From: Paraphysomonas bandaiensis
Taxonomy: Eukaryota; Protista; Chrysophyceae
Assembly: GCA_965644295.1 (NCBI GenBank)
Contig: CBFFRP010000092.1
Span: 1-64,000, forward strand
Direction: 5' to 3'
Length of the DNA: 64,000 bases
Shown here in pieces: positions 17,761 through 23,886 of the stretch. The notes under the pieces are model-generated. The model was not told the origin of the DNA, did not search any database, and saw nothing but the letters and a program-made list of their open reading frames with translations. A program made the translations under genes and the position numbers. Position 1 is the stretch's first letter, and each line of letters begins with the position of its first letter.

Positions 17761-19423
17761 TTATTCACTTTTCTCTTTCAAACTCAACTGCCAGCTAACA
17801 AAATAAGTGTAATACCACAACAAGTTACAGCAACCAAAAATAGAAAAAAGTGCAGGGTAAAGGTCTGGATATCTTTCTGGTGGAGAAATTTGCAATTCAG
17901 CAAAGTGCAACAAGAAAAATCCTATGAACATATTAGCACATTTTACTCAACAAACACTAGTAAATACCTGTGACTGATACGAGGAAGTACATGTGTCTAA
18001 TATATGTGATGAAAGGTTGTAACAGTTCGAACCAATGCTTTCTGGAACTTTTATTGTGTGCTTTTGTAACTTGTGTACTCAGAGTACCAATGTGCTTATC
18101 GAATATCCCGAAGAGTAAAGAACAATAAAAGACTAGTGTACAAAAGTAAGGAACGGCCTGACCATCTCTCTTCAGTAAAGGGTATAGCGTCATACCACCG
18201 ACTATTTGAAACCACCCAGCATCAAGTGGGCTCTGGGGAATCAAAAACGACGCCGGGACGAGAGCAAGAAGTAGTGACTTTTCATGCACTTGAAAGGACG
18301 CCAGGAAGAATGACAAAGAACAATTTACTAAAGCTAATAAAGCTCGTGATGGAGTTAGTGGCCGCCGCAATAGGTCGACACATATGGGAAAAAGAAGAAG
18401 TAGGGTAAGACCTAGGCTCGCGCGTACAAGGTGATCAGTCGATACAAGATGTCTGAATTCGAAAGGTACAGACAAACAATACCATATATTCGCGACTTTA
18501 TCTTCAAATATGCCTCGAGAAAAAGGGAACAGACGATGAACTATTTGTAAAAGCGTGGAAGTACAAGTGTTTTCGCCGCTAAGAAACGCGCAGAACGGAG
18601 TCCACAGGGCAGCAAACGTTAGGATGACTGTGCCTCCAACCAGTATTAGATGGACAAGTGAAGGAAATAGTGAGGATTTCATCCTGGACGAGGTATAACT
18701 CTTCAAGAAACATTTCCGAAGAAGTGAAAAAAAAAACATGGGGGCATAATATAGAGACATTTGTTTAAAGTTCAACGATAATGAGAAAAAAATACTGCCA
18801 GCAAAATCTCTGTCCACGAGGATCGCAACAGCACCGAGAAAAGCCAATCCAATACTGACTCCGTTATACTGAAAGTGTCCATGATCAATTAATATCAAAG
18901 GGGGTGCTAATAAAACTATAGCCAATATAGATTCGTACTCAAATGATTTGCAACGCTTTCTTGCAATGAGCACTCTGCACAATGCAACAACAGCAGGAAT
19001 AAGAATCACGAGATCACATAATAAAACAGACGCTCTCATAAAGGCTTTCCCAGTAGATGATTCATGACCGCGGGACTCATGCAAAAGAACAAGTTCAGGA
19101 AATACTGCATGTGCAACAATTCCGAATGCATACGATGTATAGGCAGTAAGTGGTGGATAGTCTAAACCCCAATACAGCAAATCATTATGAGTTGTATTCC
19201 TATACCTATAAATCCATTATAATAGATATAATATCAATATGATTATTAATTACCAATCTTCCATTCTTAATGCAGTGGTAATCTCCATCCAATGCCTCTG
19301 AGCCTCATAGTCTCCATACATTGGAGGATGTTGATATCCTGAGTAACCCCACATACCAACAGACACTCGTATAACAAGACATATTATAAATACACATGTA
19401 CTCCATGGTAATAGTTGTTGCAT
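17761..19423 (-). CDS. ALG6: Dol-P-Glc:Man9GlcNAc2-PP-Dol alpha-1,3-glucosyltransferase; exons 19423-19254, 19205-17968, 17921-17761
   Basis: PPMYGDYEAQRHWMEIT, YWGLDYPPLTAY, IDHGHFQYN, RGIFEDKVAN, FQVHEKS, PPERYPDL; C-terminal KEKSE (KxKxx ER signal). Confidence 0.95.
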
Positions 19424-19779
19424 TGATTAATATTTGGATTATTAGTGTTTAATGTGCCTCTTTGTGGAAATGATTTTGATATGTATATATATATATATGC
19501 ATATATATGGGCACACTTAAGTAAGCATTGTACCTATAAAGTGTACTTATATACATATCTATGTACATACAGTAGTACATGATGTACAGCAGTATACATA
19601 TGTACACATATACATACATAAGTACAAAGGGTTATAGATACAGCAGTACTGTACTGGCGAGTGAGTACCTTCAGTACCTTCAGTGGACTGGTAGCATGCA
19701 TCTCAACTTAAATTATTAACAGTGTAATTGACGATTATACCATAGTTTCATATAGTTTTTTTATCAAGTATGACATAGT

Positions 19780-20578
19780 ATGCCACCCGAAGAGAACGAA
19801 TCACTGATTGAGGTATGTACAATCGATATATATCACGTCCTCAATTATGAATATATTTAATAGACGAGTAATCACAAAATTCCTATTGAGAGCTTGTATA
19901 GTATTCTACAATCATCTCCTAATGGAATGGAAATGACACAGCGGCGTATTCGCCGTGAACTTGATGATATGAATGTTATTCCACCCCCTTTGAAGTGCCC
20001 TGCATGGTTATGTTGCATATTACCATGTTTATTAAAAACAAAAGATATGCAGTATTTCAATGAATGCAGTGCTGAATATGCAGAAGTTATGATAGATAAT
20101 AAATGGGTGAAAATTGATCCAGTTGGGGTGTTGACAGGTGATGTCGTTAGAGTAACTGAAGGGAACCGAGTTCCTGCGGACTTACGAGTAATATCTGTGA
20201 GTATATGCTGCACGATAAAGTAGTGCTAGTTATGACTCTTTTACAGGTAGTTGGGGAAGAGTGCAAATTTGTGCCTACATGTATTACTGGCACATCAACT
20301 CCAAGATCATGTCGGCCTGAATTATTTACGAACTCATATAGAAATTCCCCGAACATGGCATTCGCTGGGTTTATGTGCACAGAAGGTACTATAGTTACTG
20401 TTTTTGTCATTGTTGATTTTTGTTCATTGTTTTATCAGGCGAATGTATAGGAATTGTGATTGCAACGGGCCGAAATACTTTACTTGGGAGAATGATTGAG
20501 ATGAACGAATGGCCCCCGGCTTTAGTAGACGACTCCGCGGTACACGAACGAGATATCAGATTAAATTCTTTCGTGTAA
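19780..20578 (+). CDS. Stand-alone P2-type ATPase N-terminal + actuator (E1-E2) domain protein, ~215 aa; exons 19780-19812, 19864-20196, 20247-20385, 20439-20578
   Basis: GDVVRVTEGNRVPADLRVI, CITGTSTP, NMAFAGFMCTEGECIGIVIATGRNTLLGRM; three canonical introns keep frame; stop soon after. Confidence 0.8.
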
Positions 20579-20845
20579 ATCTTCATAGAGGTGTAATAAT
20601 GTTTCTAATAGTGCCACTAGATAGATTTATGGAACTAGAAATACATCTGCGCTTGTATACTGTATCTGAAATATTAACATCGGTGGGCCGTATTAGGTAC
20701 CTATAGGTACTTTTTCAGAGGTCCACCGATGTTTGTCCAATGTTCTTCACAAATTATGACTGCTGGGCGGTGACATGGTAAATATCAATGTACTTCTATT
20801 CTTCAGCTTGTTTCGTGTTGCTAATACTAAATATCGGTTTATATC

Positions 20846-20990
20846 AGGGCCTGGTAACCATTAATGGCCCATTAATGGTAGTCCAGCTCCCGGCAATTAT
20901 AATGGCATTAATGTAAAATGTCCCGGCAATTATAATGTCCCATTAATACCTACTAACTTAAAGTAGATAGCACCACTCATATAATAGATA
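20846..20990. mobile_element. hAT family-B terminus
   Basis: cagggcctggtaaccattaatgg...; reverse-complement match to ~37826-37958. Confidence 0.8.
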
Positions 20991-21694
20991 CTGTTGTGCT
21001 CCCTTAATTGCTAATTTTTAGTTAAATAGCAGACTACAAATTTTAACTACTTCTCGTTTATATCCGCCACTTTTGGAATACCATATTTTATACAAGTGAA
21101 ATAACGAAACTCTGCAACAAATCATATATAGTACATTTTGATAGGGAGCCTGAACATTTAAAAAAGTATAAATTATATAGATTTACTTCAGCCCATTGAA
21201 AGAAATATTCCAGAAAATAGCATATCAACGATCGAAATTTATATACTCGAATGCTATATACAATATACATCTTTCAGTGGGCAACAATTTAACAATATCT
21301 GTTAACTGGATTTGAGTGGAACATGTAACGTATATACTAAATAGTCTATAGTAAATATTATTTCCATTACTCAAACAGTATCATCAAAATTTGTGGTAAC
21401 AACAAAGTTGCCGTATAATTAGAGATTGCCATAAAAAAAAATCAAAAAATCAATACTTTAATGTATTGTACAATCTAGTTCGTTGCAAGCCTTTCATATT
21501 TCATAATTCTACCTTGATTATAATAATATATAAAGATATAAGGTGCATGTTCAGCGATCACAGTACCTTGATTTGATTAGTCTGGTTTCATCACCACTAT
21601 TAAAATACCAGGGGACAATGATAAAGGGGATTATTCTATGTATTAATATACTTTCGAGATGCTAGCTCGTCCAATAGTACCCTCTTAGTTACCA

Positions 21695-22245
21695 TAGGAA
21701 CAGATCGCGGGACCACTCGAGGTCTCGGAGGCACCGACGGAGTTCGCCTAGTAGTCGGTCCCGACGAAGGAGCAGCAGGTCTGAAAGTCGGGGTTCGAGA
21801 AAGTCTCGACGCTAGGAGAACTCTCGAAGGAGGAGAGACTCCGAACGGGTACATTTGAGATGTTGCAACAGCAAGTGCAGCAGTTGCAGGCAACGTTAGC
21901 AGGCCAACAATCTGCAGGAGGGGTAAGGAGTGGGAGAGCACCTGCCTCATTGCAATATAGCAATACAGGGATTGTTGGCAGAAATCAACGACCGATCCAC
22001 TTCTCACCCACCATCCCTGCATTGCTATATTGCAATGAGGCAAGTGCTCTCCCACTCCTTTCCCCTCCTGCAGATTGTTGGCCTGCTAACGTTGCCTGCA
22101 ACTGCTGCACTTGCTGTTCTCCGAGCGTCGAGACTTTCTCGAACCCCGACTTTCAGGCCTGCTGCTCCTTCGTCAGGACCAACTACTACTACGCGAACTC
22201 CGTGTGTGCCTCCGAGAAATGGAGTGGTCATGCGATCTGCTCCTA
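21695..22245. repeat. Long imperfect inverted repeat (hairpin), arms ~245-290 bp, loop ~16 nt
   Basis: e.g. cagcaagtgcagcagttgcaggcaacgttagcaggccaacaatctgcaggagggg vs cccctcctgcagattgttggcctgctaacgttgcctgcaactgctgcacttgctg. Confidence 0.92.
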
Positions 22246-22900: not shown

Positions 22901-23234
22901 CAGGTTCGGTCAAAAAGAAAACAACAACGTTTTTTTTGAGAATTTAACTTAAGCAAATGTAAAAGCTGTAAAAGCAAAGAAAGAGAGGATGCCTTGATTG
23001 TAAGAGAAGTAAAAAAGAGTTTTAAGCTGTCTGACAATCAACGCATCCTCTCTTGCAGTTGTTTTTCTCTTTCTACCGGTGCCAGGAGTGCGGTTGAAAC
23101 ATTTCGTCGAAATTATTTTGTTGTAAACTCTGCATAAATTGCCGGAATTTAGCTTCATCCGCTTCCCAATATCACGAAACGTTAGTCCGGCATGTCGAAG
23201 TGCGAGTAGCTGCTTGTTGTCAGCACTATAAACT
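22901..23234 (-). mobile_element. Tc1/mariner relic (HTH region plus one TIR)
   Basis: GLTFRDIGKRMKLNSGNLCRVY...PGTGRKRKTTAREDALIVR (GRPR-like motif); TA|CAGGTTCGGTCAAAAA terminus at 22901. Confidence 0.75.
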
Positions 23235-23805
23235 GTATGTATGTATGTATGTATGTATGTATGTATGTATGTATGTATGTATGTATGTATGTATGTATGT
23301 ACGTATGTATGTATGTATGTATGTATGTATGTATGTATGTATGTATGTATGTATGTATGTATGTATGTATGTATGTATGTATGTATGTATGTATGTATGT
23401 ATGTATGTATGTATGTATGTATGTATGTATGTATGTATGTATGTATGTATGTATGTATGTATGTATGTATGTATGTATGTATGTATGTATGTATGTATGT
23501 ATGTATGTATGTATGTATGTATGTATGTATGTATGTATGTATGTATGTATCATGTATGTATGTATGTATGTATGTATGTATGTATGTATGTATGTATGTA
23601 TGTATGTATGTATGAATGTATGTATGTATGTATGTATGTATGTATGTATGTATGTATGTATGTATGTATGTATGTATGTATGTATGTATGTATGTATGTA
23701 TGTATGTATGTATGTATGTATGTATGTATGTATGTATGTATGTATATATATTCTGTATGTATGTATGTATGTATGTATGTATGTATGTATGTATGTATGT
23801 GTGTA
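23235..23805. repeat. (TATG)n microsatellite array, ~570 bp
   Basis: Direct inspection. Confidence 0.98.
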
Positions 23806-23886
23806 TATACCGTAGCTTTGTGCGTAGATGATACATGCATGTCAACTCATTGACTTCCTTCCACTTCACTTCATTATACTTCTATT

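What the first reader, a model, noticed from the sequence alone, without database searches (positions are those of the whole stretch)
19780..20578. Spliced mini-gene encoding only the N-terminal/actuator module of a P2-type ATPase, with a Cys cluster replacing M1-M2
Seen: four exons with canonical ~50-nt introns give an intact ~215-aa protein with the cation-ATPase-N-like start, both actuator halves (VPADLRV, NMAF..G..IATG.NT..G) and a clean stop. The phosphatase motif TGES reads TGTS. There is no DKTGT, N domain or transport helix. Where M1-M2 should lie there is CPAWLCCILPCLL. Known: the A domain dephosphorylates the pump through the TGES Glu. Inference: a catalytically dead, possibly palmitoylated free actuator that regulates a full-length Na+/K+- or Ca2+-type pump in trans.
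Basis: partly seen in the sequence, partly recalled or inferred. Interest (0 to 1): 0.72.

Follow-up and report, generated by a model that had tools for sequence, protein, structure and literature searches.

The report
Free-standing pump actuator domain protein
This is a real, expressed gene for a 214-residue protein that is only the 'actuator' domain of a sodium-pump-type ATPase, tied together by a short cysteine-rich helix, and it belongs to a large, apparently undescribed family found across stramenopile protists.

Summary
Four exons (19780-20578, introns of 51, 50 and 53 nt, all GT..AG) give an intact 214-aa frame. RNA contigs from three independent data sets carry exactly these three junctions. 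They end about 230 nt after the stop and never join downstream exons.

The gene is not a pseudogene. Against a sister organism's transcript there are 5 synonymous and 1 non-synonymous changes (dN/dS about 0.06).

About 145 protein clusters (50% identity level) share the same build:
- a Cation_ATPase_N-like start;
- the hallmark motif P-x-W-[LIV]-C-C-L-L-P-C in place of the M1-M2 hairpin;
- an actuator domain;
- a stop a few residues after a conserved W-P-P.

Named members come from diatoms, chrysophytes, a raphidophyte and a labyrinthulomycete. All are uncharacterised or mislabelled as pumps.

The family profile matches Na,K-ATPase alpha best. A relative folds with high confidence as a complete actuator domain. 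The catalytic Glu of TGES is kept in only about 20% of members; here the motif reads TGTS.

Non-catalytic action and membrane tethering through the Cys helix are plausible. Regulation of a pump in trans is untested. I found no description of such proteins in the literature.

The parts
19715..19779 (+). 5' UTR (approximate start), with a trivial two-codon uORF at 19771-19779
   Evidence: RNA contigs X8 and X3 start at 19715 and 19742; X1 reaches about 19730; sequence
19780..19812 (+). Exon 1: start codon and the first 11 residues
   Evidence: The N-terminus is homologous to the starts of P0002 and P0006 (M-x-P-E-E...L-L/I-E). The junction 19812/19864 is present in three RNA data sets.
19813..19863 (+). 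Intron 1, 51 nt, GT..AG
   Evidence: Spliced out in X1, X3 and X8; retained in DNA run X14
19864..20196 (+). Exon 2: Cation_ATPase_N-like segment, Cys-rich helix and first half of the actuator domain (GD..V.V, VPADLR)
   Evidence: family profile hit E=2.5e-37
19996..20034 (+). Family hallmark motif C-P-A-W-L-C-C-I-L-P-C-L-L, standing where the M1-M2 hairpin lies in pumps
   Evidence: Invariant in the three-way alignment. Present in more than 100 cluster representatives. The PDB profile alignment shows Na,K-ATPase residues 81-143 replaced by 8 profile positions. It is a helix in the AF2 model of P0010.
20197..20246 (+). Intron 2, 50 nt, GT..AG; position shared with metagenome orthologues L057 and L058
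20247..20385 (+). Exon 3: actuator loop region and the N-M-A-F-A-G strand; ends in phase 1
20286..20297 (+). T-G-T-S at the position of the TGES dephosphorylation motif (Glu replaced by Thr)
20386..20438 (+). Intron 3, 53 nt, GT..AG, phase 1; position shared with L057 and L058
20439..20578 (+). Exon 4: last strands of the actuator domain, C-terminal helix, conserved W-P-P (20510-20518), 19 further residues, stop TAA
   Evidence: The orthologues stop 5-8 codons after W-P-P.
20579..20805 (+). 3' UTR (the end is approximate; contigs cannot show a poly(A) site)
   Evidence: RNA contigs end at 20652 (X8), 20741 (X3) and 20805 (X1), with no further junction

Best explanation
SHOWN. The locus is a single-copy, spliced, expressed gene under purifying selection. 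Its 214-aa product is a complete actuator (A) domain of a P2C (Na,K-type) P-type ATPase and nothing else. It has the N-terminal helix-turn-helix segment, the beta-rich body and the membrane-proximal stalk helices. Everything from M3 onward is absent. The M1-M2 hairpin is replaced by a short helix carrying the near-invariant motif P-x-W-[LIV]-C-C-L-L-P-C. It belongs to a large family with this same build, found across stramenopiles.

INFERRED (about 0.6). The protein sits on the cytosolic face of a membrane in the orientation the A domain has in a pump. The hydrophobic Cys helix would hold it there, by monotopic insertion and/or S-acylation of the three conserved Cys, helped by the C-terminal W-P-P that lies where M3 would enter the bilayer.

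INFERRED (high). It acts non-catalytically. It has no phosphorylation, nucleotide-binding or transport parts, and the TGES Glu is Thr here and is kept in only about a fifth of the family.

INFERRED (about 0.3). Its partner is a P2-type pump, whose cycle it would modulate by occupying A-domain contact surfaces. The genome has one true P2C pump on contig C180 and ATP4/ENA-like pumps.
For: - Gene model and expression. All three junctions occur in three RNA data sets and none in the DNA run; transcripts end 75-230 nt after the stop.
- Selection: 5 synonymous and 1 non-synonymous differences to organism B's transcript, dN/dS about 0.06, P=0.0024.
- Orthologues with the same two intron positions and early stops: L057 and L058.
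- Family size and build: 149 clusters at E<=1e-10, all 54-438 aa; only three of the best 150 are pump fragments with M2.
- Domain content: PF00690 positions 2-51 of 69 plus PF00122 positions 1-99 of 181.
- Origin: the profile matches Na,K-ATPase alpha at 7e-36, against H,K 1e-31, MgtA 1e-24 and SERCA 3e-22, with residues 81-143 (M1-M2) skipped.
- Fold: AF2 model of relative P0010 has pLDDT 92.8 and pTM 0.88, with the motif as a helix. Foldseek gives E=2.6e-15 to Na,K-ATPase. The Atlas search gives TM 0.80-0.83 over 188 of 201 residues.
- TGES Glu: kept in 25 of 118 representatives.
- Taxa: Nitzschia, Hondaea, Fibrocapsa and Chromulina.
- Own genome: the family is single-copy and a resident P2C pump exists.
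Against: - No experiment or computation here shows membrane binding, acylation or any partner.
- Displacing a pump's own A domain, which is tethered by three linkers, would be energetically hard.
- The TGES loop, the part that contacts the phosphorylation site, is among the least conserved parts of the family.
- Gene neighbourhoods in other genomes show no linked pump.
- The fold was computed on a relative about 44% identical, not on the window's own protein, because the joined exon sequence was not submitted to any tool.
- About a fifth of members keep T-G-E, so some clades may retain a catalytic-type contact.
Confidence: 0.6

Rival explanations
1. The protein is a neofunctionalised membrane-surface adaptor that no longer has anything to do with pumps. 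The A-domain body serves as a generic protein-binding module. The conserved Cys helix is the functional centre, acting as an acylated anchor, a metal or redox site, or a dimerisation element.
For: The family-specific near-invariant residues are the Cys motif and the W-P-P end, not the TGES loop. No pump lies next to the gene in other genomes. The family is well separated from true pumps: the first pump fragment scores 4.7e-12 against 1e-57 to 1e-20 for members.
Against: The whole A-domain architecture, including the N-terminal segment and all stalk helices, is kept with near-pump geometry (TM 0.80-0.83, rmsd about 3 A). That is more than a generic scaffold needs. About 20% of members keep T-G-E.
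Confidence: 0.3
2. The protein is a trans-acting dephosphorylation factor. The free A domain would insert its TGES-like loop into the phosphorylated site of a pump or another HAD-type phosphoenzyme and catalyse hydrolysis.
For: Some family members keep T-G-E or even T-G-E-S (for example P0038). The A domain is the built-in phosphatase of P-type ATPases (established knowledge of SERCA Glu183).
Against: In this gene the Glu is Thr. The two nearest metagenome orthologues read K-D-N-S and N-G-E-H. The position is variable in about 80% of the family.
Confidence: 0.05
3. The locus is a decaying pseudogene fragment of a P2 pump that happens to keep an open frame.
For: It lacks most of the pump, and no close paralogue exists in the genome.
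Against: It is spliced and present in polyA RNA from three studies. dN/dS is about 0.06. Orthologues at 50-54% identity keep the frame, the intron positions and the early stop. There are about 145 family clusters.
Confidence: 0.02
4. The locus is the 5' part of a longer pump gene whose downstream exons were missed.
For: None beyond the domain order.
Against: The window holds no P, N or TM coding sequence. RNA contigs end after the stop without further junctions. The stop position is conserved in orthologues and in intronless genomic ORFs of about 200 aa.
Confidence: 0.02

Closest known systems
Actuator (A) domain of P2C P-type ATPases (Na,K-ATPase and H,K-ATPase alpha subunits)
   Same: The sequence profile matches best here (7e-36). 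The fold is the same over nearly the whole length. The N-terminal segment, the stalk helices and the structural motifs G-D..V, V-P-A-D-x-R and N-x-A-F are all kept.
   Different: It is a separate polypeptide of about 200 aa. It has no M1-M2 hairpin, no M3-M10 and no P or N domain. The catalytic Glu of TGES is not conserved. It gains an invariant C-C-L-L-P-C helix and a W-P-P end.
Small regulators of P2 pumps (phospholamban, sarcolipin, FXYD proteins)
   Same: If the pump-partner idea is right, this would be a small separate protein tuning a P2 pump at the membrane. FXYD1 is also S-palmitoylated next to the membrane (my own knowledge, not tested here).
   Different: Those regulators are single-pass transmembrane micropeptides unrelated to the pump. 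This protein is a cytosolic globular domain derived from the pump itself, with no transmembrane span.
Cysteine-cluster lipid-anchored peripheral proteins (SNAP-25, cysteine-string protein, phospholipid scramblase)
   Same: A tight cluster of Cys lies inside a short hydrophobic stretch followed by basic residues. This is the usual context of S-acylation (my own knowledge).
   Different: There is no sequence relationship, and acylation is not shown here.
Full-length P2C pump of the same genome (contig C180)
   Same: It has the same ancestral subfamily. Its N-terminal exon shows the P-P-x-x-T-P-x-W-V-K-F stretch, homologous to the start of the Cys motif.
   Different: The C180 gene keeps M1-M2 and the rest of the pump. 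It is only distantly similar to the mini-gene (45% over 22 aa), so the mini-gene is not a recent copy of it.

Membership tests
P-type ATPase (functional pump, P2C subfamily) | Phosphorylation motif D-K-T-G-T in a P domain | tested here: not met
   Absent from the ORF, the transcript and the whole 64-kb window.
P-type ATPase (functional pump, P2C subfamily) | T-G-E-S dephosphorylation loop with the catalytic Glu | tested here: not met
   Reads T-G-T-S at 20286-20297.
P-type ATPase (functional pump, P2C subfamily) | Transmembrane transport domain (M1-M10) | tested here: not met
   The only hydrophobic stretch is 12-13 residues long. Na,K-ATPase residues 81-143 have no counterpart. The protein ends before M3.
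P-type ATPase (functional pump, P2C subfamily) | A-domain fold with the Cation_ATPase_N segment | tested here: met
   Pfam on exon 2 and on relatives. AF2 model of relative P0010 and fold searches. Tested on a relative, not on the window's joined protein.
Free-standing A-domain proteins with the C-C-L-L-P-C motif (family defined here) | Motif P-x-W-[LIV]-C-C-[LI]-L-P-C directly after P-P-P, in place of M1-M2 | tested here: met
   19996-20034.
Free-standing A-domain proteins with the C-C-L-L-P-C motif (family defined here) | Stop shortly after the conserved [WF]-P-P that follows the last A-domain helix; total length about 190-330 aa | tested here: met
   214 aa, with W-P-P at 20510-20518 and the stop 19 codons later.
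Free-standing A-domain proteins with the C-C-L-L-P-C motif (family defined here) | Profile match over the N-terminal segment and the A-domain body | tested here: met
   E=2.5e-37 for exon 2 and 5e-7 for exon 4 against profile A2.
S-acylated (palmitoylated) peripheral membrane proteins | Thioester-linked fatty acid on the Cys cluster, and membrane association that depends on it | not testable with these tools
   Only the sequence context is suggestive: three conserved Cys in a hydrophobic helix followed by Lys/Arg.

The most novel reading that the evidence does not exclude
Stramenopiles carry an ancient, dedicated 'pseudo-actuator'. This would be a lipid-anchored free copy of the pump's own A domain that docks on P2-type cation pumps and tunes their E1P/E2P cycle in trans, or docks on another phosphoenzyme. 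It would be the first regulator of a P-type ATPase that is derived from a pump domain.
Probability: 0.25. Interest if true: 0.8.

Novelty: new variant of a known kind. Interest (0 to 1): 0.62.

Why it matters
P-type ATPases are among the best-studied membrane enzymes, and their actuator domain is known only as a built-in part of the pump. A conserved, expressed family consisting of that domain alone, spread over diatoms, golden algae, raphidophytes and labyrinthulomycetes, has four consequences.

- The isolated A domain is a stable, selectable unit with a function of its own.
- It offers a natural soluble A domain for biochemical work on A-P and A-N domain contacts.
- It points to an unexplored layer of ion-pump or membrane regulation in ecologically dominant algae.
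- It exposes a systematic annotation error. Members are labelled 'Na/K-ATPase alpha-1', 'plasma-membrane proton-efflux ATPase' or 'Mg-transporting ATPase', which inflates pump counts in stramenopile genomes.

Tried and rejected
- Close paralogue in the genome: none. The best match is 36% over 56 aa to a SERCA-like gene, so a recent partial duplication is rejected.
- Downstream pump exons in the window: none found.
- Word-index protein search with exon 2: only two hits, because of its length window. The exhaustive representative search was needed to see the family.
- Conserved gene neighbourhood: rejected. Neighbours differ between contigs and no pump is adjacent.
- Literature: searches for stand-alone or truncated actuator domains, for the motif string, and a 2023 review of P-type ATPases found nothing on such proteins.
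- ESM Atlas feature search: it gave a lead to a 227-aa oomycete cluster that I could not verify.
- Exons were searched one by one by reference, and the fold was made on relative P0010.

Full report
**1. The observation**

- Exon 1 is 19780-19812, exon 2 is 19864-20196, exon 3 is 20247-20385 (ending in phase 1) and exon 4 is 20439-20578, with TAA at 20576-20578.
- The introns are 51, 50 and 53 nt and all are GT..AG. The product has 214 residues.
- Exon 2 alone passes Pfam's cut-off for E1-E2_ATPase (28.9 bits against 28.1) and gives a weak Cation_ATPase_N hit.
- The TGES position reads T-G-T-S (20286-20297). The Cys cluster C-P-A-W-L-C-C-I-L-P-C-L-L lies at 19996-20034.
- tblastn of five full-length P-type ATPases of the same genome against all 64 kb hits only 19867-20193. 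The window therefore holds no phosphorylation, nucleotide-binding or transport part.

**2. Expression and gene ends**

One look-up found RNA data sets holding about half of the words of 19400-21000. I laid four runs on 18800-21700.
- All three junctions appear at exactly the predicted places in contigs from X1 (organism A, 922-nt contig), X3 (a polyA marine metatranscriptome) and X8 (organism B, 793-nt contig).
- The DNA run X14 has a colinear contig and no such junction.
- The RNA contigs begin at about 19715-19742 and end at 20652, 20741 and 20805. That is 75-230 nt after the stop and before a high-copy repeat at 20845-20937. None carries a junction to anything downstream.
Contigs cannot give the poly(A) site or expression level.

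**3. Selection**

Organism B's transcript differs from the window at six resolved coding positions. Five are synonymous and one changes Met to Lys.
- With 22% synonymous sites in this frame, the probability of five or more synonymous changes out of six is 0.0024, and dN/dS is about 0.06.
- A seventh difference, in exon 3, was not itemised by the tool.

**4. Relatives**

*First hits.* The word-index search with exon 2 returned two metagenome proteins at 54% and 50% identity. Both have the same Cys motif and no M1-M2.
- Their contigs, L057 and L058, have the same two downstream intron positions.
- They have stop codons 5-8 codons after a conserved W-P-P.
- Their TGES equivalents read K-D-N-S and N-G-E-H.

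*Family size.* A profile of the three sequences was scored against 1.84 billion representatives and gave 149 clusters at E<=1e-10.
- All of these are 54-438 aa long.
- Inspection shows the motif P-x-W-[LIV]-C-C-L-L-P-C[LI], or a close variant, in all but three of the best 150.
- Those three are pump fragments that contain M2. The first scores 4.7e-12.

*Taxa.* Named members are:
- Fibrocapsa japonica A0A7S2USP6;
- Chromulina nebulosa A0A6T5VPP8;
- Nitzschia inconspicua KAG7341577.1 and KAG7358491.1;
- Hondaea fermentalgiana GBG29915.1;
- complete MMETSP ORFs.

They carry names such as 'uncharacterized', 'Cation-transporting P-type ATPase N-terminal domain-containing protein', 'plasma-membrane proton-efflux P-type ATPase', 'Na/K-transporting ATPase subunit alpha-1' or 'magnesium-transporting ATPase'. 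The family therefore spans ochrophytes and labyrinthulomycetes. An Atlas lead to oomycetes was not verified.

*Other genomes.* Elsewhere the gene is an intronless ORF of about 200 aa with unrelated neighbours and no adjacent pump. In the window's own genome the family is single-copy. I did not test that.

**5. What the protein is**

- Pfam on complete members gives Cation_ATPase_N positions 2-51 of 69 and E1-E2_ATPase positions 1-99 of 181. These are the two pieces that build the A domain, cut before M1 and before M3.
- A 71-sequence family profile matches Na,K-ATPase alpha best (7e-36). H,K-ATPase follows at 1e-31, MgtA at 1e-24 and SERCA at 3e-22.
- In that match, profile positions 7-56 align to residues 31-80 and positions 65-180 align to residues 144-260. 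Eight profile positions thus stand in for the 63 residues of the M1-M2 hairpin.
- The P-x-W start of the motif aligns with the P-E-W-V stretch that precedes M1.
- AlphaFold2 on P0010 (201 aa, about 44% identical to the window's exons) with the family alignment gives pLDDT 92.8 and pTM 0.88. The motif forms a helix (residues 60-70), followed by a second helix, and a C-terminal helix ends at W-P-P.
- Foldseek against the PDB ranks Na,K- and H,K-ATPases first (E=2.6e-15, TM by query 0.74). The Atlas search superimposes 188 of 201 residues on Na,K-ATPase models at 2.6-3.3 A.
- The window's own joined protein was not folded or searched, by rule.

**6. What is conserved**

I aligned 118 cluster representatives. 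They were chosen by the motif, so its own conservation in this set is by construction.
- The residues conserved at 90% or more are structural A-domain residues (G-D, P-A-D, several Gly), the N and P-P-P before the motif, and the motif itself. In the 71-sequence alignment, the Pro of the W-P-P end also reaches 90%.
- The Glu of TGES is present in only 25 of the 118. T-G-E as a whole is present in about 22, enriched in a diatom-like subclade that also has an acidic tail ending in G-I-S-L-L.
- In true pumps this Glu is essentially invariant and is required for dephosphorylation (established knowledge from SERCA Glu183). The family as a whole has been released from that constraint.

**7. Mechanism**

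*Shown.* The gene produces a free, complete A domain that cannot hydrolyse ATP or transport ions.

*Inferred.*
- All three chain segments that lead into the membrane in a pump (pre-M1, post-M2 and pre-M3) are kept. They end in the two family-specific conserved elements, the Cys helix and W-P-P.
- The protein therefore most likely sits on the cytosolic membrane face in pump-like orientation.
- The hydrophobic Cys helix would anchor it. At 12-13 residues that helix is too short to span a bilayer. S-acylation of the three conserved Cys next to basic residues is plausible.
- I put this membrane model at about 0.6.

*Less certain.*
- Modulation of a P2 pump I put at about 0.3. The genome encodes one true P2C pump on C180 with an intact M1-M2, and ATP4/ENA-like pumps on C453 and C319.
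- An unrelated adaptor role I also put at about 0.3.
- Against direct docking at a pump's catalytic site: the loop that would touch it is poorly conserved, and a tethered cis A domain is hard to displace.

**8. Novelty**

Full-text searches found no description of free-standing actuator-domain proteins or of the motif, and a broad 2023 review does not mention them. The searchable library is incomplete, so this is absence of evidence only. I rate the finding a new variant of a known kind: a known domain in a new, conserved, stand-alone architecture with a new hallmark motif.

**9. Verdict**

- The pseudogene and truncated-model readings are refuted.

Noticed in passing
window 20845-20937 (extending to about 21056): A very high-copy dispersed repeat lies just downstream of the 3' UTR. 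Summed contig depth in the DNA run is about 134,000 against about 93 for single-copy flanks, and many RNA and DNA contigs break there. It holds internal palindromic 'CCATTAATGG'-like units, so it looks like a MITE or SINE-type element.
   Followed up: no
window 17957-19423, minus strand: An ALG6/ALG8-family glucosyltransferase gene (Pfam PF03155, E=6e-101) runs divergently from the mini-gene. Its 48-nt intron at 19203-19250 is confirmed by RNA contigs. The two start codons are about 355 nt apart, which suggests a shared bidirectional promoter region rich in (TA/CATA)n.
   Followed up: partly
window 21695-22245: Nested inverted repeats: arms of 112 nt at 96% complementarity with 28 nt between them, plus outer arms of 73 and 84 nt. 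They create mirror-image ORFs on both strands. This is a large hairpin-forming element of unknown nature.
   Followed up: partly
window 23180-23870: A long (ATAC/ATGT)n-type microsatellite of about 650 nt gives artefactual 'TYIH' and 'MYVC' repeat ORFs on both strands.
   Followed up: no
G000 contig C180:41500-47500 (locus L064), minus strand: This is the genome's true P2C (Na,K-type) pump gene. It is multi-exon. Its N-terminal exon has an intact M1-M2, and TIGR01106 exon scores are the densest in the genome.
   Followed up: partly
G000 contigs C453:13786-17232 and C319 (loci L053, L054): Two intronless pumps of about 1,140 aa have as their best solved relative the 'non-SERCA-type Ca2+-transporting P-ATPase' 9n10 (PfATP4-like, E=1.7e-159). 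They are probable ATP4/ENA-type Na+ efflux pumps in a chrysophyte-like protist.
   Followed up: partly
Public records KAG7341577.1, KAG7358491.1, GBG29915.1 and several JGI gene calls: Family members of 200-320 aa are annotated as full pumps (proton-efflux, Na/K alpha-1 or Mg-transporting ATPase). This is a systematic misannotation.
   Followed up: partly
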